NCBI RefSeq assembly: GCF_006345805.1
Contig: NC_042997.1
Span: 194,184,001-194,248,000, forward strand
Source: Octopus sinensis
Taxonomy: Eukaryota
Length of the DNA stretch: 64,000 bases
Direction: 5' to 3'
A model generated the notes under the pieces. That model worked only from the letters and a program-made list of their open reading frames with translations. It ran no database searches and was not told where the DNA came from. Both the position numbers and the translations under genes were made by a program. Positions 2,016 to 58,421 of the stretch are shown here, piece by piece (position 1 is the first letter of the stretch; every line of letters begins with the position of its first letter).

Positions 2016-3150
2016 CAATTTTTATTATGAGAGCCCCTCGAATAGTTCTTAATTTCCGGTTGGTCTTTACTTGAAAGCAGGCAATAGCAAGTCACCAAAG
2101 GTTTCAAGTAGTGCCTTCTCTTATGACTCAAAGCGATAATACTTTCTTTAGAATGTGAGCTGTACTCATCAATGCCTGACAGCAGCTCCAATATTCTTAA
2201 TATGTTTTTCAAAATTCTTGGAAAGTGCTCTTAATGCTCCAATTACCACCGGTATCACAATTATTTCCTCATGCCCCATAACTTTCCTATCTCGTCCCAC
2301 AGCGGCTGGTATTTCTCGAGCTTTTCTGTTTCCCTACATTTCACCCACGAATCGATTAGTATTGCGACATCTATTATCTGTACTTCTTTTTCATCTTTAT
2401 GGATGAGCACGATATCTGGTCGTCTCGCCTCTGTGACTTGGTCGCACTGCATGTTAAAATCTGGGAGTATTTTGTAATGTTCGTTTTCCATTACTCCCTT
2501 TGGCTTGTGTTCATACCATTGTTCGGTTCTCTCGTGGTTTGCTTTACCGCACAACAGACAGTGGATGTATCTGACCACATTGTTGTGTCTCCTTTTGCAT
2601 TCGCGTTGTGCGAGCTTACAGTACTCACTAATAATATGGCTTATACTTTCTCCCTTTTCAGAGCACATCCTACACTGTGGCAAGTCAGTGCTTTTATCAA
2701 TGTGATATTTGGAGTAGTTTGTTCTGAAAGTTCGTTCTTGAGCGCTGCACACTAATGCCTCAGTGAGCCCTTTTTTTGTCTCCTTTTTTCAGCCATTGCC
2801 AAGATCTATTTAATTATTCTTCAAGAACTGACTGTACATTTTCTTGTCCTTTAACCCCACTGTCTTAGTTTCACTATCAGCATTCTCTTTCCCATCCTTC
2901 CGTTCACCGCCGGTCTTACTATCCCCGTCTCTTAATGTTTTCTAGTTCAACTGGGGATAACCAGTCGTTCTTTTTGATGGCTCTAGCTTGGTCACACAGA
3001 TTTTGTTCATTTAATTCAAATAGGCCTCTGTCGCTCCATGTCCTGTGCATTCTTTTCCTATATCCCCTAGCGGGTACTTGCTTATTATTTCTCGGATTAC
3101 CCAGAAAGTAGGAGTCCATTACAGCTGCATTCATTTCTTTCCTTTCGTCC
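2016..3150 (-). mobile_element. R4/Dong-clade REL non-LTR retrotransposon with internal deletion (no RT)
   Basis: N-terminal motif RGYRKRM..EQNLCDQARAIKKNDWLS..ELE (2919-3152) joined to the C-terminus with CRMC..H..C zinc knuckle, RHN, and RRPDIVL..IIDVA..EKLEKY REL endonuclease (2261-2752). Confidence 0.85.
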
Positions 3151-4182: not shown

Positions 4183-4868
4183 CATATGTTTGACTTTTGT
4201 TCTACATTTGTACAAGTTGGCTCCAAGTCTCACCTAGACACCTCAAAAGACAACAAGTTGGAAGTTCATGTTGGTGTTATGCCTAAGGTGCCATATATTT
4301 GGTTTTTTACTTAGTGTTGTACTAGTGAATGTTTAAGAAACCATAAGAAAATTATGTTTGTTTTAAAACTTGAGATTACATAGAAAATATTTTGCGTAGG
4401 ATATGAGCAGTTCCCATGAGTACTATCTTTTGAATTTCTGCCATTTTTGGGTTTCCTGGTATCTGAGTTAAGTAGCAATAAACCCTTTTTGCTATCATTC
4501 CCAGGGCACCTATGACAACAGGTATTGTTTTAGTCTTCAGGTTCCATATTTTGCTAATTTCTATTTCAAGATCTTTATATTTGCTCAGTTTTTGGTAGAT
4601 CTTGACAGATACGTTTATATCGATTGGGACAGTCATATCAATGAGGAGGCATGTTCTTTGTTTGAAGTCTTTCAATATGATGTCTGGCCTATTCGCATCT
4701 ATCATTCTGTCAGTTTGAATGGGGAAGTTCCAGAAGAGTGAGATGTGGTCATTTTCAAGCACTAGGGGTGGTTTGTGTTCCCACCAGTTTTTTTCATGGG
4801 GCAAATCCATGTTTTTGCAGATTACCCAGTGAATATATTGTGCAGCTCTATCATGCCTGTTGAGATAC

Positions 4869-4870
<2 letters not shown>
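4183..4870 (-). mobile_element. R4/Dong-clade 3' fragment with open REL domain
   Basis: RHDRAAQYIHW..RPDIILKD..LIDMTVP..KLSKYKDL..PVVIGALG..LMGTAHILRK, 3' UTR, (TAA)n on both sides. Confidence 0.9.
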
Positions 4871-4966
<96 letters not shown>

Positions 4967-5229
4967 GATTATTATTATTATTATTATTTGTCGTATGGGT
5001 AATCTATAGCGTATTGTATTGCGTCTATGAATTTTGAGGTTATGTTCCATAAGACGAGGACTATAAGAGTTGAAGTCTGCTACGGTATAAACATTGTGTT
5101 TCTGGCATGTCCAAATGGTCTTTCGTTTTTGTTGTTTGCTCGTTGTGCTGGTGGTCTCTGGGTGTGGTTGATGAACAACATTTGTTGACGCATTATGCAC
5201 TGTTTTGTGTTTTGTTTTCTAGTTCATTT

Positions 5230-13723: not shown

Positions 13724-13822
13724 AATGGAAAAAAGAATAAAATGGACCAGTTACGCACTGGGGTCGATCTAATCGACTGGCCCCCTCCTGTGCCTAGAGT
13801 TGAAGAGAATATACCAAACTTT

Positions 13823-14043
13823 AAGGCGATGAGCTGGCAGAATCTTTTGCATGCCGGGCAAAATGTTTAGCGGCGTTTCGTCCTTCTTAATGTTTTGAGT
13901 TCAAATTCCGCTGCGGTTGACTTTGCCTTTCACTCTTCCGGGTATCGATAAAGTAAGTACCAGTTGATCACTGGGGTCGATATAATCGACTTAGCCCTCC
14001 CCCGATAATGCTGACCTTGTGTCAAAACTGGAAACCATTATTA
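13823..14043 (+). mobile_element. SINE family B, U-type tail
   Basis: aaggcgatgagctggcag head; tail gaccttgtgtcaaaactggaaaccattatta. Confidence 0.8.
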
Positions 14044-15215: not shown

Positions 15216-15514
15216 AAAGGGACGTGATGCCGCTATGTATTTCCGTCGGCATGCTTAATGATTCTGCCAGCTCACCGCTTCGTAAATATATTAAGACATT
15301 ATTGCACAGAAGAAAATAGTACTAAATCAACAGGAAAACATAATTACATTAATCGTGGAATGTATAATTATAAGTATTAAAGCAACAAGTTAAAATGTAA
15401 TCTGACCTTTTAATGTCTTTTTATTTTGCTTTTTTGCATTAAGAATACCAGAATAAATATTTATAATGTTATTAATTTATTTTGGAAGAAGACTAGCGAT
15501 TTTGAATTGGAGCG

Positions 15515-16098
15515 GGTGGGGTCGTTTACATCAAGAGTCTTTCTGGTACTTTATTTTATTGATCCCGAAAGAATAAAAACGCAAAGTTGACCTCGGCGGG
15601 ATGTGAACTCAGAACGTAAGAAGCCGGAAGAAATATCGCTAAGTGTTTTGTCTGACACGCTCACGATTCTTATTTCATTATTGCCCACAAGGGGCTAAAC
15701 ATAGAAGGGACAAACAAGGACAGACAAGGGGTTTAAGTCGATTACATCGACCCCAGTGCGTAACTGGTACTTAATTTATCGATTCCGAAAGAAAGAAAGG
15801 TAAAGTCGACCTCGGCGGAATTTGAACTCAGAACGTAAAGACAGACGAAATACCTACTTCTTTACTACCCACAAGGGTAGTAAAGAGAGGACAAACATAG
15901 AGAGGACAAACAAGGACAGACAAACAGATTAAGTCGATTAGATCGACCCCAGTGCGTAACTGGTACTTATTTAATCGACCCCGAAAGGATGAAAGGCGAA
16001 GTCGACCTCGGCGGAATTCGAACTCAGAACGTAACGGCAGACGAAATACCGCAAAGCATTTCGTCCGGCGTGCTAACGATTCTACCAGCTCGTTGCCT
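15515..16098 (-). mobile_element. Head-to-tail SINE-B trimer
   Basis: Full copy, then units starting at ggtatttcg and at agaatcgt; two T tails. Confidence 0.85.
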
Positions 16099-16149
16099 GA
16101 AGTAATGTAATTAATTAAAAATGCCATTTTGAATGTAAAATTCAAACTC

Positions 16150-16590
16150 CTTCTAGAATCTCTACATCAATCGTTTTTGCCTTGGACATAAAGATATACT
16201 AGTGTATCGAGTCTTCGTTTTGCAACACTCTTCAGTGAACTTGTGAACTTACGCCAATGCAAGCTGAATCCATTAAACTGTCTCCTATCTTGTTCGTCCG
16301 TCAGAGCGACGAGAACCATGTAGTCATCCTAGGACCACTGATGACCTGTATGATTATTTTTGTTTAGAATGAAAAATTAGTTGCCCACAGTCAACCATAC
16401 CCTCTCGTCCGTGACCATCCAATTGCAAGACCAGGTCAAGAAGACTGGAAACGGAAGTGGATGCAGTGAGTGATCGAGACGTCGTACTTGTCTCGTTTTA
16501 CTCACTGCAGTCCACAATACTTTGGTGTAGCCGTCTTCTTCTCCGTTGAAACTTGAAGATTTCTCTGTAGAATCCACCGGATCCTGTCTT
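16150..16590 (-). mobile_element. Possible Penelope-like RT relic
   Basis: ATPKYCGLQ*VKR..GLAIGW..DSLMDSACIGVSS loosely follows the PLE pattern P-x-x-YGLPK-x-HK..LA-x-W..SFDV; many stops. Confidence 0.35.
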
Positions 16591-16600
16591 CACATGTATA

Positions 16601-16829
16601 TATTTCTTTACTGCCCACAAGGAGCTATACACAGAGGAGACAAACAAGGACAGACGGATTAAGTCGATTATATCGACCCCATTGCGTAACTGGTACTTAA
16701 TTTATCGTCCCCGAAAGGATGAAAGGCAAAGTCGACCTCAGCGGAATTTGAACTCAGAACGTAACGACAGGCGAAATACGGCTACGCATTTCGCCCGGCG
16801 TGCTAACGTTTCTGCCAGCTCGCCGCCTT
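16601..16829 (-). mobile_element. SINE family B, full length, T tail, 15-bp TSD
   Basis: TSD gtcttcacatgtata at 16586-16600 and 16833-16847. Confidence 0.92.
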
Positions 16830-18061
16830 TCAGTCTTCACATGTATAGGTAGCCAAACCCTAATATGCTAATTAACTCATAGCTGAAAACACTAGTGGTT
16901 AAGAAATGGTTGGTTCCAAACTCTTCATAACCATGCAACTCCCGAACCAGGGACCCTCTACAGTTTAAATTTATAGCTAGGAGGACATACTGTCTTCTAT
17001 ACCATCGCTACATCCTTAACTTTTCTAACGATGTTGACTATAGCTTTTCTGAAAAGAAGATTTATTCGATATAGTCACCGTTCTCCAGCAATTACTCCTA
17101 CTCTGACACGACTAGGACTCCTCTAATCTCCAGAACTGTTAATAATCGTCGTTTTATTATGCAAATTCCCAGTCTTTGTGAATTTAAAACATTAACAGTT
17201 GTCTTGTATCCTTACTTCTTCAACCAAAAGAGTTTAAAAGTACAGCGAACCCGCCTCAGAATTAAGTAATAAAAAAAGAAGTATAACCTTTTTGCTAAAA
17301 GATATAGTATTCGATTCGCTACGAAATAGCCTTAATTCTCTCGCTTTTTTGTTGAACATTGTAAGAAAAATATTTTTAAACCAGACAGTCAGTAAAAGGC
17401 TATAGTACTTTTATTATCTATTTCTGAAAAGGAGACACCGTGCTTTTAAACTTATCTATAAAGCAAGATTCGTTCTGCATCAAGTAGAATTTCAAACCGG
17501 CCATTTTGTGTAACTAGAATTCTGTTTATGTTACGCAGCGAAAATATGTGACTAAATGTGTTTGTTTAGTTCTAAATTTGCGCGTAGAGTTGCTTCTTTC
17601 AGCTTATAGATACTTTTGTTAGTATATTATTCAAAGTTGAATTATTTTCTTTCGGTTTTTATCTTTGATTGACATTTATACTTATTGTGTTGTTTGCGGG
17701 GATTTTTCTGTGTATTTTATTGCATGTTTCGGCTATGTTTATTTATGTTTATTTATTTGTGTATGTTTAGGTTAATTATTTAGATTTGAACGACTTTCTT
17801 CAGTCTCGTATTATTTCTGACGTGGAAAATCGGATTGACTCTTGCCTGTTGAATTTTCTTTTTAATTTTCGTTGCTTAGTTTTCAGGCCAGGGGTAGCCA
17901 ACAGTCGATAGTTGCGCAATCCTATTATGAAAGACATTCTAGCCGTGACCATTCACTAATGTCAGATATGTGTTCTTTTTTTAAAAAAAAAGTGAGGTAG
18001 GTTTGATAGCAAATCAAAGATTTGATAGCAAATCAATCAATAACATAGAGGCTTGATGATA

Positions 18062-18092
<31 letters not shown>

Positions 18093-19332
18093 CGACGACG
18101 ACAGAGATGGCGGTGGCAACGGTGATGACAATGAAGATGATTTATAATTGTTCCCGTAGCGTAATTGGTGGTGGTGGTGGTGAGGAGAGAAGGGCTAATC
18201 CGCTCCGAGCGGCGTTTTAATGGGGGCAGCACTTTTTTGGGGTCTACTGTATAACTTTTATAGGGAGCAAAAAAGGGTGCACAGCTAATTCAAGAGTTGT
18301 CCCCGAGTGGCACACCCTCTAGCTTCTCCACTTCCCAATTTAGTCCGAATCTCAAATCCAAAGTGTTCCAATCGTGATCACTATATCTTTTTTTTTCTTT
18401 CAGCCATAGTATATCTAGGACTACAATATCTAGTGTGTCCTGTATCCTTTCTTTCTAAACAGTAATAAAATGTAATTCACGAAGAAGCTCCTTCGTCGAA
18501 AGAGAATTGGGTGTTGGGTAGAGTGATGATAAAATAGTTATTGTGGTAACTGGCTTTGAATTAGCATCGAGAATCCGATCAATTTCACGGTTTATAGGCG
18601 TCGAATGTAATTGACAGTCTTTCACGGTAATAATGGGGTCAACAAACCATTTAAAGCACGTACCTTGTGTATGTGTGTTCGATGTTGTTTAAATCCCTCG
18701 AACTGCTATATTTGAATTTTTTTCCGTGGTATGAAATATTGGAACATACGGACAGATGGTCCTTACACCATTTTTTTTTTTTTTTTGTAACTGTAGACAG
18801 CGATTTAGCTTACATCTGGCCTTGTTTCGGCTACAAGTCACAAAAATGACAAAACATCGACGTCTGTCGCTCCTGAATGGGACCAGATGCGAGTTATCTC
18901 GCTTGTCTATGACTTTCAGGTGTTTTAACACCAGGCGAATTGATGAGAATATATTCTCTTACGCCTACAAGCGTAGCCTGCCCACAAACACCAGCAAATC
19001 ACGTATATGTGTGTGTGTGAGTAAATGTATGTATTTACATATCTGTATGTATAGTGAAGACCAAGATGATTGGGACTTAAAGTTTCGCCTAACAGTTTGT
19101 TCAGCCAATCTGACTGAATTATGAGTATAAAAATACACCAGCAGCTCATGCTCAAACGCTCAATTCTTATTTCAATAATCGTTTAAAATATTATTTTCAT
19201 ACAAACACACATGCGCATGCGCGCACGCATATAAGTATGTTCATATCTATCAATCTATCTATCTGCCTATCTATCTATCTATCTCTTACCTGTGTGTCTA
19301 TCTATCTATCTGCCTATCTATTTATCTCTTAC

Positions 19333-26452: not shown

Positions 26453-26654
26453 TTATTGTTATTATATTATATTTTCTACTGGAAGCACAAGGCCTCAATT
26501 TTGGGAGAAGGGCTTAAGTCAATTACATCGATCCCAGTGTCTAACTCAGAATTTGAACTCAGAACGTAGCAGCAGACAATATATCGCTAAGCATTTTCGT
26601 CCAGCGCGCTAACGATTCTGCCAGCTTGCCACCTTAATAATAATACTTTCTACT

Positions 26655-27924
26655 ATAGGCGTGGTTGTGGTTAAGAAGCTTGCTTCCCAACCACATGGTT
26701 CCAGGTTCAGTCCTACTACGTGACACCTTGGGCAAGTGTCTTCTACTGTAGCCTTGGGCCGACCAAAGCCTTGTGAGTGGATTTGGTAGACTGAAACTGA
26801 AAGAAACCCGTCGTGTATATAATGTATATATATATAATATATATATATATACTAAGCATAAGGGTCAGCAACGAATTGCCTTACCACATACCGAATTTAG
26901 AAATAGCAGTCAAAGGGTTATGCTATTTCTTCTACTAAAAAGGGAGATCTCAGTAAAAAACGCAATTGGAAGGCTGACACAAACAGGTAAGAGAGATGAA
27001 TTAACCGCAATCTATCAAACATTTTTAAAGTTATCCACGGACGTACGTTTCGAAATCAAGTTTTAGGAAAGCATAAGAATTAAATATTTAATATTAAATA
27101 ATTCTACTTACCCGAAACTTCTTTTCTCTTCAGCGTGGATACTATCATCATAATGATTATATTTAATTTTGAGATACTAGGAGGTACCAACTCAACTCAG
27201 TATCAGAGCGAGCTAGAATCCTCAACTAGTATCACACGAATTCAAATTTGTGAATGAAACGATTGTGTCAACAGCCCCTTCCCACCCGCGTGTAGCCAAA
27301 ACAAGATGCTGTAGTCATCTACTGAGATAAAATAATGGGTTATCCGTAATAATGAGGGTGAAATTAATTAATTTGGAATAATTATCAATTACCCAAGTAT
27401 CTTTCGGCATGTAAAAGCCTCATTTGAGAAAATTTAAGTAATACTAAGCAATAAGGTTCAGCAACGAATTGCCTTACCACATACCGAATTTAGAAATAGC
27501 AGTCAAAGGGTATAGCTATTTCTTCTACTAAAAAGGGAGATCTCAGTAAAAACATCAATTGGAAGGCTGACACAACAGGTAAGAGAGAATGAATTAACCG
27601 CAATCTATCAAACATTTTTAAAGTTATCCACGGACGTACGTTTCGAAATCAAGTTTTAGGAAAGCATAAGAATTAAAATATTAAATATTAAATAATTCTA
27701 TCTTACCGAACTTCTTTTCTCTTCAGCGTGGAATACTATAATCATAATGATTATATATTGAATTTTGAGATACTAGGAGGTACCAACTCAACTCAGTATC
27801 AGAGCGAGCTAGAATCCTCAACTAGTATCACCGAATTCAAATTTGTGAATGAAACGATTGTGTCAACAGCCCCTTCCCACCCGCGTATATATATATATAT
27901 AAAGAAACCCATCGTATATATATA

Positions 27925-28192: not shown

Positions 28193-29279
28193 TAGGAACA
28201 AGGCCTGAAACTTGGGGGAGGGGATAGAAGAATACATCGATCCCCCTGTGTTTCACTGGTACTTAATTTATCGAACCCCGAAAGAATGAAAATCTAAATG
28301 GGCCTCAGCGGAATTTGAACTCAGAACGTAGCACCGGGTGGAAAAACCACTGAGCATTTCGTCCAGCTCGCTAACGATTCTTATTTCTTTATTGCCCACA
28401 AGGGGCTAAACACAGAGAGGACAAGCAAGGACAGGCAAACGGATTAAGTCGATTATATCGACCCCAGTTAAGAAATCGAGCTGGCAGAACCGTTAGCACG
28501 CTGGGCGAAATGCGTAGTCGTATTTCGTCTGCCGCTACGTTCTGAGTTCAAATTCCGCCGAGGTCGACTTTGCCTTTCATCCTTTCGGGGTCGATAAATT
28601 AAGTACCAGTTACATTCTTTCGGATGTAATCGTCTTAATCCGTTTGTCTGTACTTGTTTGTCCCCTCTGTGTTTAGCCCCTTGTGGGTAGTAAAGAAACA
28701 TATATCGACCCCAGTGCGTAACTGGTACTTATTTAATCGACCCCGTAAGAATGAAAGGCAAAGTCGGCCTCAGCTGAATTTGAACTCAGAACGTAGCATC
28801 GGGTGGAAAAACCGCTGAGCATTTCGTCCAGCTTGCTAACGATTCTTATTTCTTTATTGCCCACAAGGGGCTAAACACAGAGAGGACAAGCAAGGACAGA
28901 CAAACGGATTAAGTCGATTATATCGACCCCATTGCGTAACTGGTACTTATTTAATCAACCCCGAAATGATGAAAGGCAAAGTCTACCCCATTGCGTAACT
29001 GGTACTTATTTAATCAACCCCGAAATGATGAAAGGCAAAGTCGACCTCGGCGGAATTTGAACTCAGAACGTACCGGCAGACGAAATACCTATTTCAAACA
29101 AGGACAGACAAACGGATTAAGTTGATTACATCGACTCCAGTGCGTAACTGGTACTTAATTTATCGACCCCGAAATGATGAAAGGCAAAGTCGACCTCGGC
29201 GGAATTTGAACTCAGAACGTAGCGGCAGACGAAATACCGCTAAGTATTTCGCCCGGCGTGCTAACGACTCTGCCAGCTC
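28193..29279 (-). mobile_element. SINE-B multimer with an inverted copy nested at ~28470-28700
   Basis: Repeated T tails, recurrent junctions, terminal U tail. Confidence 0.85.
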
Positions 29280-29297
29280 GACAACTTCGCCATCTTA

Positions 29298-33023: not shown

Positions 33024-33123
33024 NNNNNNNNNNNNNNNNNNNNNNNNNNNNNNNNNNNNNNNNNNNNNNNNNNNNNNNNNNNNNNNNNNNNNNNNNNNNN
33101 NNNNNNNNNNNNNNNNNNNNNNN
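33024..33123. other. Assembly gap, 100 N
   Basis: Direct reading. Confidence 1.
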
Positions 33124-36294: not shown

Positions 36295-36860
36295 ACAAGG
36301 TGGCGAGCTGGCAGAAACGTTAGCACGCCGGGCGAAATGCGTAGCCGTATTTCGTCTGTCGTTACGTTCTGAGTTCAAATTCCGCTGAGGTCGACTTTGC
36401 CTTTCATCCTTTCGGGGTCGATAAATTAAGTACCAGTACGTACGTACTGGGTCGATGTAATCGACCTGAACCTATGTCTGTCCTTGTTTGTCCCCTCTGT
36501 CTTTGGCCCCTTGTGGGTAATAAAGAAATAGGTATTTCGTCTGCCGCTACGTTCTGAGTTCAAATTCCGCCGAGGTCGTCTTCGCCTTTCATTTTTTCGA
36601 GGTCGATAAATTAAGTACCAGTTACGCACTCGGATCGATGTAATCGACTTAATCCATTTGTCTGTCCTTGTTTGTCCTCTCTGTGTTTAGCCCCTGTGGG
36701 TAGTAAAGAAATAGGTATTTCGTCTGTATTCATGTTCTGAAAGGCAAAGCTCGACCTTGCCTTTCATCTTTTCGAGGTCGATAAATTAAGTACCAGTTGC
36801 ATACTCGGTCGATCTAACCGAGTGGGCTCGTCCCCCAAAATTTCGGGCATTGTGCCCGCC
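36295..36860 (+). mobile_element. Head-to-tail SINE-B trimer (T, T, U tails)
   Basis: gaaata|ggtatttcg junctions at 36530 and 36713. Confidence 0.88.
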
Positions 36861-37603: not shown

Positions 37604-38205
37604 ACTACATCTGTTTCCAATTCACACATCAATGAGTTCCGGCGTTGTTTTTTTCCTTTCCTGTTTATGTAAATATTTTCTTCCCCCGTTGCACCTGTAC
37701 TTAACGACACGAGATTTTCCTCAAGTAATTAGCCAACCCAATCAATTATTTTAAACACAATATTAACTAAAATAAAGATCTGCAGTTCTAGAGTTAATTC
37801 CCCCATAAAGTCACGTTGCCATGATCAGCAGACGATTCTTATCGCCAATGTTTCCTAACCTGCCTTATCTCGTCCTTCCAATTGCAATGGGTTTTTTATT
37901 TCCAGCATTTATCTTAAAGGGCTTCCAGGTTTATAACTTTACTTAAATTTTATAATCCCTCGCCCCCTTCTTTAAAGATTTCATAAAAGAAATACTTATT
38001 TTGCTAAAAATATAGTTTTATCGTTAGATTTTAATTAAATATATATTTTAATGTTGTTTTTTATCACTTTAAACGTCTCTAAATTTCCCAGTATTATCAA
38101 TTCCTGTTTGCGCTATATTAATATTTCTGTTTCACTAGAAACAGCTGCAATGGCAGCAAAATCGTGTAAGCCAGACTAAAATACCGCGTGGTATTTTGTT
38201 ACTTA

Positions 38206-38959
38206 AAGGCAGCGAACTGGCAGAAACGTTAGCACGCCGGGCGAAATGCTTAGCGGTATTTCGTCTGCCGAAGGCGGCGAGCTGGCAGAAACGTTAGCAC
38301 GCCGAGCAAAATGCTTAGCGGTATTTCGTCTGCCGAAGGCGGCGAGCTGGCAGAAACGTTAGGCACGCTGGGCGAAATGCTTAGCGGTATTCGTCTGCCG
38401 TTACGTTATGAGTTCAAATTCCGTTCCGCCGAGGTCGACTTTGTCTTTCACATCCTTTCGGGTCGATTAAATAAGTACCAGTTACGCACTGGGGGTCGAT
38501 AATAATCGACTTAATCCGTTTTCTGTCCTTGTTTGTCCCCTCTGTGTTTAGCCCCCTTGTGGGTAAGTAAAGAAATAGGTATTTCGTCTGCCGTTACGTT
38601 GTGAGTTCGAATTCCGCCGAGGTCGACTTTGTCTTTCATCCTTTCGGGGTCGATTAAATAAGTCCCAGTTACGCACTGGGGTCGATATAATCGACTTAAT
38701 CCGTTTGTCTGTCCTTGTTTGTCCCCTCTGTGTTTAGCTAGCCCCTGTGGGTAATAAAGAAATAGGTATTTCATCTGCCGTTGCGTTCTGGGTTCAAATT
38801 CCGTCCGCCCAGGAGGGTCGACTTTGTCTTTTCATAAATCCTTTCGGGGTCGATTAAATAAGTACCAGTTACACTGGGGTCGATATAATCGACTTAATCC
38901 GTTTGTCTGTCCTTGTTTGTCCCCTCTATGTTAAGCCCGCTGTGGGTAGTAAAGAAATA
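38206..38959 (+). mobile_element. Doubly self-nested SINE-B
   Basis: Two 65-bp head stubs, one full copy, two 3' remainders; inner TSD ggtatttcgtctgccg; outer TSD ggtattttgt(t/a)actta at 38190-38205 and 38960-38975. Confidence 0.92.
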
Positions 38960-39377
38960 GGTATTTTGTAACTTATTTCATAGTCTGGGTTGAAGTTCCA
39001 TCAAGGTCAAAACTGTGCCTTTCATCCTAACGAGAATAAAATAAAGTACAGGAATTGGTTTAACACTTTGCCTAACTGGTGACTCCTGCAGTTACAGAAC
39101 GAATATTATATTCGTTCAGCACCGCAGAAGTCACAGGTGGTATCCATGCTATAAATTAATATGATAATCTATGTAGTGAACTAGAACATATATATGGTGA
39201 AAATAATTTTTAATGCAGAATTTATGACGATATTAAATCGTCGGTGCAAAAAAAGTATGGCACAAAATGAACTTGGTTGGCCATTTTGTGTTGATATTCC
39301 TAAAGGTAATTGTAATTATCAGAAGAAGACTTTGCCTTTCATCCTTCCTGGAGGCCGATAAAATAAAGTACTGGTTA

Positions 39378-41332: not shown

Positions 41333-41508
41333 AGTGCGTGTGTGTATGTGTGTGTGTGTGTGTGTGTGTGTATTTGTATGTGTGTGTGTATGTGTATTTG
41401 TGCTCTGTAAATTAAAAACCAAAATTTTCTCGCCTTATGCGTTCTGTTTTGACGAACTTTTAGAAAAGGTATTTAACAAAAATGCAATTGTTGTTGTTAT
41501 TATTATCC

Positions 41509-43860: not shown

Positions 43861-44001
43861 CTTATGCATACTGTGTGTATGCATATATAGCCAAAGTGAT
43901 ACAGTGGCTATATATGCACAGAGCTCTATAATGCAATGCTATGTTGTTTATTTAAAATCCTTCAAAATCTAATGCAAATTTCTGTTTCTGTTTCATTACA
44001 G

Positions 44002-44434
44002 CTCACAACGAACCACAGATCAAGGGACTGCAAAGGGTGTTCAAAAGATTTTGTAAACGAACGGTCTTATTACAGAGTGAAAGGTGAGCGAGGAGAACCA
44101 GGGCTGCCAGGAAAAGATGGGCGCCCTGGATTGGCGGGCAGACCTGGGCCTAAAGGAGAACGAGGTCCCACCGGTCCTGTCGGAATGCCAGGACGTCCTG
44201 GAGATACAATAAACAGAAGAAAAGACAGAAAACCATATCGTGTGGCCGGTCCACCTGGGCCCCCGGGTTTACCAGGACCTCCCGGACCACCGGGCCCACG
44301 TGGACCGACTGGGTTATCAGGTATCCCTGGATTACCAGGGGTAAATGCTGTTGAGAAAACAGATTCAGTTGGACATTCGGAAGGACCTGGATTACATGGC
44401 AGGTTTAGCAAAGCTGGCTCTGATGATATACGAG
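44002..44434 (+). CDS. COL26A1-like: Exon of COL26A1/EMID1-like gene: two interrupted collagen segments
   Basis: Acceptor ttctgtttcattacAG, donor CGAG|GTATGA; 433 nt, phase 0 to 1; [13 protein letters not shown].. then 14 Gly-X-Y triplets, a basic linker, and 11 triplets. ORF 43936..44487 overruns both splice sites. Confidence 0.92.
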
Positions 44435-45144
44435 GTATGAAACCAAATCTCTTTTTTTCTTTCTCTGTCTCTTTAATACCATTATAATTATGGATTAATC
44501 AGATCCACAAGAGAGTCCAACTTGCGACCTCAGTGGCATTGATCAGTACTGTGTTAATAACAGCAGCTTTGCGTGCATGTATGTATGTATTTAATTTTCA
44601 ATACTTTGTAGGACATATACGCATTTCATCAAAATGCCGAAATAATTACATAACACTTGTAGAAATAGTACGCGATCATGCACCTAACCTCATCAGTGTC
44701 CGGCAGCAAATACATTCATCCATAAATATAGTGACAACTTATCATTTGATGAATAACTTCGAATTCACAGCTTGTACCTGACATAAGATATATCTAACAT
44801 ACACGGGTTACTATACTCTTCACTGGTCACTTTGTTAGCCGTGTCCATTACATGGAGTACTTACTAAGATATTCGCCTGGATTTCTTTAATCCCTATTTT
44901 CTATCGCTATATAATAAATACATACATACATACATACATACATGCATATATACATACATACACACATACATACATATGTGAATAAATATTCATATATGTA
45001 TGTATACATGTACAAAGGTATGCATATGTATATATATTTATGTGTGTGTGTGTGTGTGTGTGTAATTGTATGCATGTATATACACACACATACATATAAA
45101 TAAACACACATATACACACTACACACACGCATAATTATATATAC

Positions 45145-45528
45145 GTTTCTACTCTAGGCACAAGGCCTGAAATTTTAGGGGAGGGGTCTAGTCGATTAGA
45201 TCGATCCCAGTACGCAACTGGTACTTAATTTATCGACCCCCGAAAGGATGAAAGGCAAAGTCAACCTCGGCGGAATTTGAACTCAGAACGTAAAGACAGA
45301 CAAAATACCTATTTCTTTACTACCCACAAGGGGCTAAACAAGGACAGACAAAGGGGTCGAGTCAATTACATTCTTCCCATTGCGTTACTGGTACTTATTT
45401 AATCGACCCCGAAAGGATAAAAAGCAAAGTCGACCTCGGCGGAATTTGAACTCAGGACATAGCGGCAGACGAAATACCGCTAAGTATTTCGCGCGGCGTG
45501 CTAACGATTCTGCCAGCTTGCTGCCTTC
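45145..45528 (-). mobile_element. SINE-B dimer (T-tailed copy joined into a U-tailed copy)
   Basis: Junction caaaatacc|tatttc near 45309. Confidence 0.85.
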
Positions 45529-48142: not shown

Positions 48143-49504
48143 ATAGTCACATATTTACTTAACTATGAAAATACTTATGTATGCCAAAAAAATTATTTTT
48201 TCAAATAGTTAAACACATAAATAAAGGCGATCAAACGAAAGGGAAGAGAAAAAGGAAGATTAAAGGAGAGTATAAGAATATAAAAATAAAATCAAATAGA
48301 TATCTGGTCTGTCTTTACGTTCTGAGTTCAAATTCCGCCGAGGTGGACCCTTTCATCCTTTCGGGGTTTGTAATCAGGTTATTTACACAGCTACGTCCCC
48401 CAAAATTTCTGGCTTTGTGCCTAGAGTAGGAAAGAATAAAGATAGAATCAGCTGAAAAGCTTTTACTAATTGTGAAGTCGAACTTGTATGTCTATCGCCG
48501 ATTATTTCTGCTTCATTCATCACTGACTCGAGGTAACTGAGTACACTGATTGTGAACTGTGTTACGCTTATCACGAATTGATCTGTAATAACATGGGTCG
48601 GTGATCAAAGTTTCTGCTTGGGCCGCAAAAGTGAGCCCCAACGACCATCCACAATGCTCAAAACAACTTAGTGTTACGGAACAAAAACTATTTTTCCTAT
48701 ACCTTCTATTATTCGTTTGTCATTGATTCAATAAAGTGTTTTGAGAATGAAAATCATACGTGATATACGAGGATATATGTATTATGTAAGTTGTACTGAA
48801 ATGGCTGTGTAAATATCTTTTTCTACTCTTGGCACAAGGCCTGAAATTTTGAGTGCGGGAGCTAGTCCTTTAGATCTACCCCAGTACGCAACTGGTACTT
48901 AATTTATCGACCCCGAAAGCGGTAGACGAAATACTGTTAAGCATTTCGTGCGGCGTACTAACGGTTCTGCCAACTTGCCGCCTTACAAGTACCAATAATA
49001 GTCCTTTCTACTATAGGCACAAGGCTTGGAATTTGTGGGGGAGAGGACAGTCGATTACATCGACCCCAGTACTTGACCAGTTCTTAATTTATTGATCCCG
49101 AAAGGTTGAAAGGCAAAGTCGACCTCGGCGGAATTTGAACTCAGAACGTAAAGACAGACTTGGCTGTGTAAATATACTTTACTACTCTTGGCACAAGGCC
49201 CGAAATTCCATTAGATCGACTCCAGTACGCAACTGGTACTTAATTTATCGACCCCAAAAGGATGTAAGGCAAAATCGACCTCGGCGGAATTTGAACACAG
49301 AACATAAAGACAGACGAAATGATTCCATCTTTATTACATCAAAGATATCTATTTGATTAAATTTTTATATTCTTATATTCTCCTTTAATCTTCCTTTTTC
49401 TTTTCCCTTTCGTTTGATCGCCTTTATTTATGTGTTTAACTATTTAAAAAAATAATTTTTTGGCATACATAAGTATTTTTATAGTTAAGTAAATATGGGA
49501 CTAT
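48143..49504. repeat. Inverted duplication, ~162-bp AT-rich arms (48143-48305, 49343-49504)
   Basis: Arms are near-perfect reverse complements; inner sides continue into oppositely oriented SINE-B pieces. Confidence 0.88.
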
Positions 49505-57632: not shown

Positions 57633-57869
57633 CGCACGCACACACACGTACACACACATTCTTTTATTTAGTCATTTTGCTGCGGCCATGCTAGAGCACC
57701 ACCTTGTTGGGTTTAGTCGAATAAACCGACGCCAGTAATTATTCTAAGTTGCAGACGTCTTCTATTGGACTCTTTGGCTAAATCGCTAACTTTGGGGACG
57801 TAAACAAACCGACACCTGTTGTTGCTGCTGAGACAAACTCAAAGACACGTACACATACACTTATTGATT

Positions 57870-58421
57870 TCAAATTTTGAAACAAGGCCAACAATTTCGG
57901 AGAGGGGGATAAGTCGATTACAGCGACCCCAGTGCTCAACTGACACTTGTATAATCGATCCCGGCGGCATTTGAACTCAGAAAGTCACAAGAAATGCCGC
58001 TAAGCATTTTTTTCCGGCCGGTAACGATTCTTTTCTACTCAAGGACCGAAATTTTGAGGGAGGGGCCCAGTTCGATTAGATCAACCTCAGTACACAACTG
58101 GTACTTAATTTATCGACCCCGAAAGGATGAAGGGCAAAGTCGACCTCGGCGGAATTTGAACGCAGAACGTAGCGGCAGACGAAATACCTATTTCTTTACT
58201 TACCCACAAGGGGCTAAACAAAGAGGGGACAAACAAGGACAGACAAACGGATTAAGTCGATTATATCGACCCCAGTGCGTAACTGGTACTTAATTTATCG
58301 ACCCCGGAAGGATGAAAGGCAAAGTCGACCTCGGCGGAATTTGAACTCACAACGTAACGCAGACGAAATACCGCTTAGCATTTCGCCCGGCATGCTAACG
58401 TTTCTGCCAGCCATCCGCCTT
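57870..58421 (-). mobile_element. SINE-B multimer
   Basis: gaaatacc|tatttc junction near 58188; U tail joined at aacgattct near 58030. Confidence 0.82.

What the first reader, a model, noticed from the sequence alone, without database searches (positions are those of the whole stretch)
38190..38975. Self-targeting SINE: a two-step nest with every TSD still readable
Seen: outer TSD GGTATTTtgttactta, head stub (38206-38270), head stub (38271-38335), full copy (38336-38577), 3' remainder (38578-38764), 3' remainder (38765-38959), outer TSD. Stubs end and remainders begin with the same 16-mer GGTATTTcgtctgccg, as expected from two successive TPRT insertions into the same site of the SINE's own head; the original genomic target also starts GGTATTT. 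The same tail|GGTATTT junction recurs at ~15853, 29089, 36530, 36713, 45309 and 58188, and a second one (tail|AGAATCG, in the A box) at ~15670, 28381, 28846 and 58030. Inference: the SINE carries a preferred site for its partner endonuclease and builds arrays on itself, destroying the older promoter. Solo-copy TSDs start with varied sequence, so this is a preference, not strict specificity.
Basis: partly seen in the sequence, partly recalled or inferred. Interest (0 to 1): 0.8.

Follow-up and report, generated by a model that had tools for sequence, protein, structure and literature searches.

The report
Octopus SINE nested into its own hotspot
A short mobile element of the octopus genome has jumped three times in a row into the same spot of its own sequence, and the same spot is hit in about a quarter of the copies in this window, which extends a behaviour known from human Alu elements to a mollusc and shows how such elements build tandem arrays.

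Summary
The described structure is real and deeper than reported. 38206-38959 is stub(1-65), stub(1-65), full copy, remainder(50-233), remainder(50-233) of a 233-bp tRNA-derived Octopus SINE. The "outer genomic TSD" is the same 16-bp segment (positions 50-65) of an older, ~26% diverged SINE: removing the nest restores one contiguous old copy (z=15-18). So three nested insertions hit the same site, each with a 16-bp TSD. The hotspot is real: 9 tail|50 and 4 tail|17 junctions in 64 kb, all in sense orientation (P~1e-20 under uniform placement). About 26% of copies are hit, roughly 500-fold over background.

The interpretation needs correcting. The five other arrays have no head stubs, so they are not classical nests. 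In arrays A and G the first 16 nt of the 5' copy are old (22% vs 4% divergence), so the new copy was joined in register to the old head (homology-guided 5' resolution). Bare GGTATTT outside SINEs is never occupied (0/16). Unequal crossing-over has also reshaped the arrays. No multimeric master copy is supported.

The closest precedent is the Alu self-insertion hotspot (Levy et al. 2010). I rate this a new variant of a known kind, of moderate interest. All evidence comes from one 64-kb window.

The parts
38150..38205 (+). H0: head remnant of the oldest SINE copy (~26% diverged over its remainder). It ends in its own version of the hotspot 16-mer, GGTATTTTGTTACTTA (38190-38205).
   Evidence: Aligns in register to consensus 13-59 (z=4.5). 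Joined to 38976 onward it forms one contiguous SINE through the join (z=15-18).
38206..38270 (+). H1: head stub (consensus 1-65) of the first young insertion, ending in GGTATTTCGTCTGCCG.
   Evidence: 96.9% to consensus.
38271..38335 (+). H2: head stub (1-65) of the second young insertion, ending in the same 16-mer.
38336..38577 (+). F3: innermost complete copy (1-233, with several small indels). It is the only unit in D with the A-box and B-box regions contiguous.
38578..38764 (+). T2: 3' remainder (50-233) belonging to H2.
   Evidence: 94.7%. Starts with the exact 16-mer directly after the tail AAGAAATA.
38765..38959 (+). T1: 3' remainder (50-233) belonging to H1.
   Evidence: 87.8% including indels. 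Its 16-mer carries one CpG-type change.
38960..39049 (+). T0: 3' remainder of the oldest copy, starting at consensus position 50 with GGTATTTTGTAACTTA.
   Evidence: z=11.6, alignment starts exactly at position 50.
15478..16098 (-). Array A: full copy (16098-15855) | remainder 50-233 (15854-15671) | older remainder 17-end (15670-~15478). No stub. The whole array is flanked by the TSD AATTAAT[T/A]ACATTA plus 4-nt filler.
   Evidence: Divergence is 3.2 < 7.4 < 14.4%. The first 16 nt of the 5' copy have 4/16 differences.
28195..29296 (-). Array B: 9-nt mini-stub | copy 1-193 | remainder 50-233 (with an internal 59-bp duplication) | 17-233 unit interrupted by an antisense copy (28477-28698, 15-bp TSD) | 17-end unit. 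Unit 3 is the head of unit 4 plus the tail of unit 2, i.e. an unequal crossover product.
   Evidence: The full copy and its remainder share a private C>A at position 113.
36297..36850 (+). Array C: full copy | remainder 50-233 | older family-2 remainder 50-end. No stub.
   Evidence: 3.2 < 10.5 < 12.8%.
45152..45527 (-). Array E: full copy | family-2 remainder 50-end. No stub. The divergence order is reversed (11.6% vs 2.1%).
57857..58421 (-). Array G: full copy | family-2 remainder 50-end | older family-3 remainder 17-end. No stub. The first 16 nt of the 5' copy have 3/16 differences, including an 'ATG' variant that also occurs one base upstream in family-3 copy 13823.

Best explanation
The element is a ~233-bp tRNA-derived SINE of Octopus. 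It has a CORE-like body and a fixed, non-poly(A) tail ending ...GTAAAGAAATA, and it moves by LINE-driven target-primed reverse transcription.

Its own head contains a very strongly preferred insertion site. The first (bottom-strand) nick falls between positions 49 and 50, so the new copy's tail abuts GGTATTT. In the canonical outcome the second (top-strand) nick falls between 65 and 66, which duplicates the 16 bp at positions 50-65. That 16-mer corresponds to what looks like the anticodon arm of the parental tRNA, with loop TTTCGTC. An older hotspot lies at 16/17 (tail|AGAATCG).

At 38150-39049 this happened three times in succession. A young copy entered an old, diverged copy. A second copy then entered the first, and a third entered the second, each at the same site. 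The result is H0 H1 H2 [full] T2 T1 T0, in which only the innermost copy keeps an unsplit promoter region.

At the other five loci the same first nick was resolved differently. The new cDNA is homologous to the target upstream of the nick, so the 5' junction formed in register. This is homology or microhomology-guided second-strand priming, SDSA-like. The product is old-head + new-body + old-remainder, with no stub and no visible TSD, still flanked by the old copy's own TSD. Once arrays exist, unequal crossing-over between units adds or reshuffles units.

Shown: the anatomy, the TSDs, the restored empty site, the position clustering, the sense bias, the old 5' heads and the crossover product.

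Inferred: the nick positions and their order, the homology-guided resolution, and the cause of the site preference. That cause may be a longer recognition motif such as GGTATTTYGT, or a requirement for SINE context.
For: - Structure and periodicities.
- Solo copies have 11-18 bp TSDs, so the element moves by TPRT.
- The outer 16-mers share 6 private differences, and the joined flanks form one contiguous old SINE, z=15-18 (z=11.6).
- There are 9 tail|50 and 4 tail|17 junctions and no other sense junction in the window, P~1e-20. Sense versus antisense is 12:1, p=0.003. Occupancy is 9/34 copies, about 500-fold over background.
- The five stub-less arrays.
- Array A is flanked as a whole by a 14-bp TSD with 4-nt filler, like a solo insertion.
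- The first 16 nt of the 5' copy in arrays with a 17-type unit show 10/48 differences, against 13/285 in their bodies (p=0.0004) and 3/80 in solo copies (p=0.004). Without locus B the counts are 7/32 vs 8/190, p=0.002.
- Divergence rises from 5' to 3' in A, B, C and G.
- Stub-less arrays outnumber the reciprocal form 5:0. That argues against loss of stubs by recombination, which should favour the longer 184-bp repeats.
- Precedents: the Alu sense self-insertion hotspot (PMC2836564), and cDNA pairing with nearby homologous DNA in an SDSA-like process for L1 (bioRxiv 10.1101/2024.08.27.596794).
Against: - Only one 64-kb window was available, and no genome-wide sample could be obtained.
- The three canonical events all sit in one array (p=1/84). 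They have exactly 16-bp TSDs and no filler, unlike solo insertions (p=0.012). Events 2 and 3 hit near-identical young copies, where in-register joining should have been easy.
- Array E has the reverse age order.
- Full copies and their 50-type remainders have similar CpG retention (37/40 vs 35/40), so 'remainder older than new body' is not shown for the tail|50 events.
- The hybrid-head test rests on 32-48 nucleotides.
- The cause of the site preference is unknown. The bare 7-mer is not enough (0/16 outside SINEs), and the hairpin is weak and absent in the old site that was hit.
- The partner LINE was not identified.
- The one external contig (L002) shows a junction at about position 118, not at 50 or 17.
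Confidence: 0.6

Rival explanations
1. Reverse-transcriptase template jumping. During a single retrotransposition event the RT stops at position 50 (or 17) of one SINE RNA, for example at a processed 5' end or a modified tRNA-like base. It then jumps to the 3' end of another SINE RNA, producing [full][50-end][17-end] concatemers at a fresh genomic site, flanked by one TSD.
For: - The stub-less arrays have precise tail|50 and tail|17 junctions, and array A is flanked by a single TSD.
- Full copies and 50-type remainders have similar CpG retention.
- 5'-truncated solo copies start in a cluster at positions ~50-66.
- Template switching is the mechanism usually invoked for SINE module exchange (PMC4758252).
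Against: - It cannot produce the stubs and TSDs of D, where DNA-level staggered nicks at 49/50 and 65/66 are demonstrated.
- It predicts a complete, uniformly young 5' copy, but the first 16 nt are old in A and G.
- It predicts no age order, yet 17-type units are always the most 3' and the most diverged.
- There is no microhomology between the switch point and the tail.
Confidence: 0.15
2. Local DNA duplication. After one or two real nesting events, unequal sister-chromatid exchange or replication slippage between the 65-bp head units and between the 184-bp body units added the further units in D. It would also have produced or trimmed the other arrays.
For: - Array B contains a clear crossover product: unit 3 is the head of unit 4 plus the tail of unit 2.
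- The D units share one private substitution, and D_F3 and D_T1 have D_T2 as their nearest neighbour.
- The D junctions are unusually uniform, with 16-bp TSDs and no filler.
Against: - It cannot create junctions that coincide exactly with both SINE termini, so at least the first two D events must be insertions.
- It needs two independent exchanges that happened to give equal numbers of stubs and remainders.
- No pair of head units shares a private change.
- Units in A, C, E and G belong to different subfamilies.
- Deletion by recombination should give head-head-body forms at least as often as head-body-body forms, but the count is 0 vs 5.
Confidence: 0.15
3. Multimeric master copy. A dimeric or trimeric SINE (full copy plus remainder) is itself transcribed by read-through and retrotransposes as a unit.
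For: - The consensus has no T4 terminator, so read-through of arrays is conceivable (direct reading of the consensus).
- Array A is flanked by one TSD.
Against: - Arrays differ in unit composition: family 1 + family 1 + family 3, family 1 + family 2, and so on.
- They share no private mutations across loci.
- The hybrid old heads fit sequential build-up better.
Confidence: 0.03

Closest known systems
Alu self-insertion hotspot in the human genome (Levy, Schwartz & Ast 2010, NAR; PMC2836564)
   Same: A SINE inserts into older copies of itself, overwhelmingly in sense orientation and at essentially one position of the consensus, which is not the canonical endonuclease motif. That paper reports ~16,000-19,000 cases.
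   Different: - The Alu hotspot lies next to the A-rich linker and is explained by poly(A)/poly(T) priming. Here the SINE has a fixed non-poly(A) tail and the site is a GC|GGTATTTCG segment of the tRNA-derived head.
- The duplication here is a uniform 16 bp.
- There are two hotspots of different age.
- Most events here are resolved in register, without a stub.
- Up to three successive hits occurred at one locus.
Homology-guided (SDSA-like) 5' resolution of LINE-1 insertions, giving chimeric L1s (Gilbert et al. 2002/2005 from my own knowledge; summarised in bioRxiv 10.1101/2024.08.27.596794). R2 5'-end integration by homologous recombination (Fujimoto et al. 2004) is also from my own knowledge.
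   Same: The nascent cDNA pairs with homologous DNA at or near the target, so the 5' junction forms in register with a resident copy instead of by end-joining.
   Different: Those cases come from cell-culture or tumour data, usually involve deletions, and concern LINEs. Here the mechanism is inferred for a SINE entering its own family at a fixed site, and it yields head-sharing tandem arrays.
Site-specific non-LTR retrotransposons (R1/R2, R4/Dong, Tx1-clade elements that target small-RNA genes or other transposons; my own knowledge). Dong-R4 and L1-Tx1 LINEs are reported as recently active in O. vulgaris (PMC13282606).
   Same: Repeated insertion at one exact phosphodiester bond, with a constant target duplication, in a multicopy sequence derived from an RNA gene.
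   Different: Solo copies of this SINE sit at unrelated sequences with variable TSDs, so the machinery is not strictly site-specific. The partner LINE is unknown.
Octopus tRNA-derived CORE-type SINEs (OR1/OR2; Ohshima & Okada 1994, as cited in PMC4824008 and PMC4758252)
   Same: An octopus host, a tRNA-like head with an Arg-type (TCG) anticodon-loop remnant, and a body that resembles the CORE domain (my reading).
   Different: I could not compare against the published OR1/OR2 sequences, so family identity is a lead, not a tested result.

Membership tests
LINE-mobilised (TPRT) tRNA-derived SINE | Short dispersed multicopy element flanked by variable-length target-site duplications | tested here: met
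   About 45 fragments fall in the 64-kb window, covering 11.9% of it. Five solo copies and one antisense nest have TSDs of 11-18 bp.
LINE-mobilised (TPRT) tRNA-derived SINE | tRNA-derived head with internal pol III A and B boxes | tested here: inconclusive
   A B-box-like GAGTTCAAATTCC (75-87), an A-box-like TGGCAGAA[A/T]CG (13-23) and an anticodon-arm-like 49-65 are visible by eye. However, ARAGORN and Rfam give no hit, and the MFE fold is not significant (z=-1.5).
LINE-mobilised (TPRT) tRNA-derived SINE | 3' tail shared with a partner LINE | not testable with these tools
   No LINE 3' end matching either SINE tail occurs in the window, and no octopus genome or repeat library was available.
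Nested transposon insertion (TE in TE) | Removing the insert and one TSD copy restores a contiguous host element | tested here: met
   The joined flanks of D align as one SINE, consensus 13-137, through the join, z=15-18. The same logic holds by construction for the two inner levels.
Nested transposon insertion (TE in TE) | Both TSD copies carry the host element's private mutations | tested here: met
   GGTATTTTGTTACTTA and GGTATTTTGTAACTTA share 6 differences from the consensus 16-mer. For the inner levels the 16-mers equal the consensus, so they are uninformative.
Nested transposon insertion (TE in TE) | Inner copies are younger than outer copies | tested here: inconclusive
   The oldest level is 25.9% diverged against 3-5% for the three young levels. 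The three young levels cannot be ordered (3.2, 5.3 and 4.3%).
Nested transposon insertion, applied to arrays A, B, C, E and G | One head stub for every 3' remainder | tested here: not met
   There are 0 stubs against 10 remainders. B has only a 9-nt mini-stub. These arrays are therefore not classical nests.
SINE self-insertion hotspot (Alu type, Levy et al. 2010) | Sense-orientation insertions concentrated at one or a few consensus positions, beyond expectation | tested here: met
   Twelve independent sense junctions fall on 2 positions, P~1e-20. Sense versus antisense is 12:1, p=0.003.
SINE self-insertion hotspot (Alu type, Levy et al. 2010) | Hotspot explained by an A-rich tract that primes on the poly(A) tail | tested here: not met
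   The tail is a fixed ...AAGAAATA and the site is GC|GGTATTTCG, with no A-tract. The 17-site, AGAATCG, shares only AGAA with the tails.
Strictly site-specific non-LTR retrotransposition (R2/Tx1 type) | Essentially all copies sit in the same target sequence | tested here: not met
   Solo TSDs start GTAGTTC, TATACAT, ATGCATA, AATATTC, AATGCGA and TATATCG.
Multimeric master SINE | The same composite with the same diagnostic mutations at several loci | tested here: not met
   Arrays combine different subfamilies, and no private state is shared across loci.
Tandem array grown by unequal crossing-over | A hybrid unit whose two halves match its two neighbours | tested here: met
   This holds only for units 3 and 4 of array B. 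It was not seen in D, where no two head units share a private change.

The most novel reading that the evidence does not exclude
The self-targeting is not a mere endonuclease sequence preference. In this reading the SINE, or its partner LINE, is guided to resident SINE copies in one of three ways: by a site-specific enzyme that originally targeted the anticodon-arm region of a tRNA-Arg gene, by RNA-DNA homology, or by pol III-open chromatin. An active copy would then preferentially re-insert into itself in cis, producing rapid multi-level nests from one source lineage and seeding tandem arrays. The D units share a private substitution, and so do the full copy and remainder of B.
Probability: 0.15. 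Interest if true: 0.7.

Novelty: new variant of a known kind. Interest (0 to 1): 0.45.

Why it matters
If the pattern holds genome-wide, about a quarter of the copies of a family that makes up roughly a tenth of the octopus genome have served as landing pads for their own kind, at one exact bond.

That would give a concrete, testable route from dispersed SINEs to tandem arrays and satellite-like DNA. It would show a natural case where one first nick yields two outcomes, a canonical TSD or in-register homology-guided joining. It would also provide a sharp target sequence for finding and testing the unknown partner LINE endonuclease in cephalopods.

There is a practical point for repeat annotation as well. 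In-register arrays look like '5'-truncated copies next to full copies', so insertion counts and ages would be misread.

Tried and rejected
- **More octopus sequence via protein handles.** The open +2 frame of the SINE gave one O. vulgaris 'hypothetical protein', whose 20-kb locus holds only one full copy and one weak fragment. A frame spanning the tail|50 junction gave one 543-bp ENA contig.
- **Orthologous locus.** The collagen-repeat ORF near D found no annotated orthologue at E<=1e-10 (the cut-off was strict, but a true orthologue would have passed).
- **Exact ORF look-ups.** ORFs in and near D are not on record.
- **Contig scans.** Exact scans of metagenome and prokaryote genome contigs for the SINE core gave 0 hits.
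- **Literature search by sequence strings.** Nothing relevant. No held paper on octopus repeats mentions nesting or arrays.
- **ARAGORN and Rfam.** No hits.
- **Hairpin or cruciform at the hotspot.** Rejected as the cause. The DNA hairpin is -1.9 kcal/mol with z=0.26, and it is absent in the old site that was nevertheless hit.
- **The bare 7-mer GGTATTT as a sufficient target.** Rejected (0/16 outside SINEs; the doubtful site at 41468 is unique DNA).
- **Remainders as independent 5'-truncated insertions later hit at their 5' edge.** Rejected, because no 16-bp duplicate lies upstream of the full copies.
- **RT block at a modified G26-like base.** This would place the stop one base away from the observed junction and cannot explain D. 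I kept it only as part of the template-jump rival.
- **TSDs around arrays B, C, E and G.** Not detectable.
Full report
**What is there.** The window is eukaryotic, AT-rich and full of one SINE superfamily (11.9% of bases). A translated frame of the element is 96% identical to an Octopus vulgaris 'hypothetical predicted protein' on chromosome OX597819.1, so the host is an octopus. That is consistent with the 11.6% SINE content and the SINE/LINE burst at JC~0.065 reported for O. vulgaris (PMC13282606).

From 12 copies I built a 233-bp consensus. It runs AAGGCGGCGAGCTGGCAGAAACG...GAGTTCAAATTCCGCCGAGGTCGAC...GGGTAGTAAAGAAATA. Five solo copies have clean TSDs of 11-18 bp, with 3-6 nt of filler before the 5' end, so the element moves by target-primed reverse transcription. 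A second family shares positions 1-~168 but has another 3' module, and older families exist as well.

**The observation.** It is confirmed in full. The units are 38206-38270 = 1-65, 38271-38335 = 1-65, 38336-38577 = 1-233, 38578-38764 = 50-233 and 38765-38959 = 50-233. Stubs end and remainders begin with GGTATTTCGTCTGCCG (positions 50-65).

The junctions at both ends of each inserted unit coincide exactly with the SINE's 5' end and its tail. Arbitrary tandem duplication would not do this. An insertion with a 16-bp target duplication predicts it.

**A correction that strengthens the nest.** The 'outer genomic TSD' is not unique DNA. The sequence from 38960 aligns to consensus 50-137 starting exactly at position 50 (z=11.6). 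The sequence before 38205 aligns to 13-59. When the nest and one 16-mer are removed, the joined flanks align as one contiguous old SINE straight through the join (z=15-18).

This oldest copy is ~26% diverged. Its two 16-mers, GGTATTTTGTTACTTA and GGTATTTTGTAACTTA, share six private differences from the consensus. That proves they are duplicates of one mutated target. The locus is therefore a three-step, four-level nest, H0 H1 H2 [F3] T2 T1 T0, and all three hits fell at 49/50 with a 16-bp duplication.

**The hotspot.** In element orientation the window holds nine tail|50 junctions: three in D, two in C, and one each in A, B, E and G. It holds four tail|17 junctions: A, G and two in B, of which one is a duplicate. 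No other sense junction inside a SINE body exists. There is one antisense nest, at consensus 147-161 with a 15-bp TSD.

| Measure | Result |
|---|---|
| 12 independent events on 2 of ~215 positions | P~1e-20 |
| Sense vs antisense | 12:1, p=0.003 |
| Copies hit at 49/50 | 9 of 34, about 500-fold over background density |
| Exact GGTATTT sites occupied | 9/15 at SINE position 50 vs 0/16 outside SINEs, p=0.0002 |

So either a longer motif is read (the sites that were hit share about GGTATTTYGT), or SINE context itself matters. Positions 49-65 look like the anticodon arm of the parental tRNA, with stem CGGTA/TGCCG and loop TTTCGTC (TCG = Arg). As DNA the hairpin is weak (z=0.26), and it is absent from the old site that was hit, so structure is not the cause.

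**The other arrays are not classical nests.** A, B, C, E and G are [full copy][50-end]([17-end]) with unique DNA upstream. They hold no stubs against ten remainders.

Loss of stubs by recombination is unlikely. The longer 184-bp repeats should recombine more often and give head-head-body forms, but the count is 0 against 5.

Two findings point to in-register joining:
- Array A as a whole is flanked by a 14-bp TSD plus 4-nt filler, like a solo insertion.
- In the arrays that end in a 17-type unit, the first 16 nt of the 5' copy are far more diverged than the rest of that copy. The counts are 10/48 vs 13/285 (p=0.0004), against 3/80 in solo copies (p=0.004). Without B, which has a 9-nt mini-stub, they are 7/32 vs 8/190 (p=0.002).

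In G those 16 nt also carry an 'ATG' variant that occurs, one base upstream, in a family-3 copy. The old head was therefore kept and the new copy joined to it in register. Divergence rises from 5' to 3' in A, B, C and G, while E is reversed.

The simplest single account is the same first nick followed by homology-guided second-strand priming, because the cDNA is homologous to the target upstream of the nick. This is akin to the SDSA-like pairing described for L1.

RT template jumping remains possible for the tail|50 events, where full copies and remainders have similar CpG retention. It cannot make D, and it predicts uniformly young 5' copies.

**Secondary processes.** In B, unit 3 shares the private head variants of unit 4 and the private tail variants of unit 2. 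That is an unequal crossover product.

The D units share one private substitution (position 104 C>T in 3/3 units and 0/14 elsewhere). The full copy and remainder of B share another, at position 113. So each of these arrays was built from one rare source lineage, possibly the locus itself. This cannot be settled in 64 kb.

The D units differ from each other by 6-12%. The nest is therefore old, roughly the age of the family's main burst, and probably fixed.

**Open problems.**
- All canonical events sit in D (p=1/84).
- They have identical 16-bp TSDs and no filler, unlike solo insertions (p=0.012).
- Events 2 and 3 hit near-identical copies, yet kept their stubs.
- Array E has the reverse age order.
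- The one external contig shows a junction near position 118.

**Comparison with what is known.** The closest precedent is the sense-oriented, single-position Alu self-insertion hotspot (PMC2836564). Here the tail is not poly(A), the site is not A-rich, two hotspots of different age exist, and most events are resolved in register.

The behaviour resembles site-specific non-LTR elements in its precision. It fails their defining feature, because solo copies lie at unrelated sites.

I found no description of this behaviour for octopus SINEs in the held literature.

**Verdict.** This is a real, well-preserved three-step self-nest at a genuine hotspot. It is a new variant of a known kind, of moderate interest, limited by the single-window sample.

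Noticed in passing
window 28477-28698 (+) inside the (-) copy 28382-28846: An antisense nest of a family-1 copy in another SINE, at consensus 147-161, with a 15-bp TSD (TATATCGACCCCAGT). It is the only SINE-in-SINE insertion in the window that is not at position 50 or 17.
   Followed up: partly
window 28230-28933 (-): Unit 3 of array B shares private head variants with unit 4 and private tail variants with unit 2. That marks a ~465-bp tandem duplication by unequal crossing-over. The 50-type unit also has an internal 59-bp tandem duplication (about 28950-29066).
   Followed up: partly
window 48864-48984 (-): A copy reading [1-65] joined to [~111-168]. The left deletion breakpoint falls exactly at 65/66, the inferred top-strand nick site of the hotspot.
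   Followed up: no
window 13735-13823, 26635-26660, 48984-49010: Three full copies begin 10-20 bp after the tail of an older same-orientation SINE. Tail-adjacent insertion may be a third preferred context.
   Followed up: no
window 13680, 14562, 15155, 21298, 28146, 35550, 37254, 46312, 46539: A second abundant repeat (...TTTTACTTGTTTCAGTCATTTGACTGCGGCCATGCTGGAGCACCGCC...) has nine copies. Several directly abut the 3' end of family-2 SINEs, so it may be part of a longer composite element.
   Followed up: no
window 14818, 20952, 33207, 35915, 39757, 46016; also L002: A third, tRNA-like repeat family (...GTGGTAAGTAGCTTGCTTACCAACCACATGGTTCCGGGTTCAGTCCC...) is interspersed with the SINEs.
   Followed up: no
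window 43936-44487 (+): A 183-aa ORF with collagen triple-helix repeats (PF01391, E=1.6e-12), probably a real exon about 5 kb from the nest. No annotated orthologue was found at E<=1e-10.
   Followed up: partly
window 2261-2752 (-) and 4376-5200 (-): Two paralogous ORFs that look like the C-terminal region of a retroelement protein (shared ...EHKP...RPDI...ID...KY...W motifs). Neither has a significant Pfam hit, and microsatellites lie next to them. They were not linked to the SINE tails.
   Followed up: partly
window 33024-33123: A 100-N assembly gap. It is not near any of the arrays.
   Followed up: yes
L002 (ENA metagenome scaffold, 543 bp): Octopus-like host DNA in a metagenome assembly. 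It holds a full family-1 copy followed by a family-2 remainder that starts near position 118, so this sense junction lies outside the two hotspots.
   Followed up: partly
window 48301-48367 (+) and 49204-49360 (-): Two 5'-truncated family-2 copies share the same upstream flank (AATCAAATAGATATCT) in opposite orientation. This suggests a local inverted segmental duplication.
   Followed up: no
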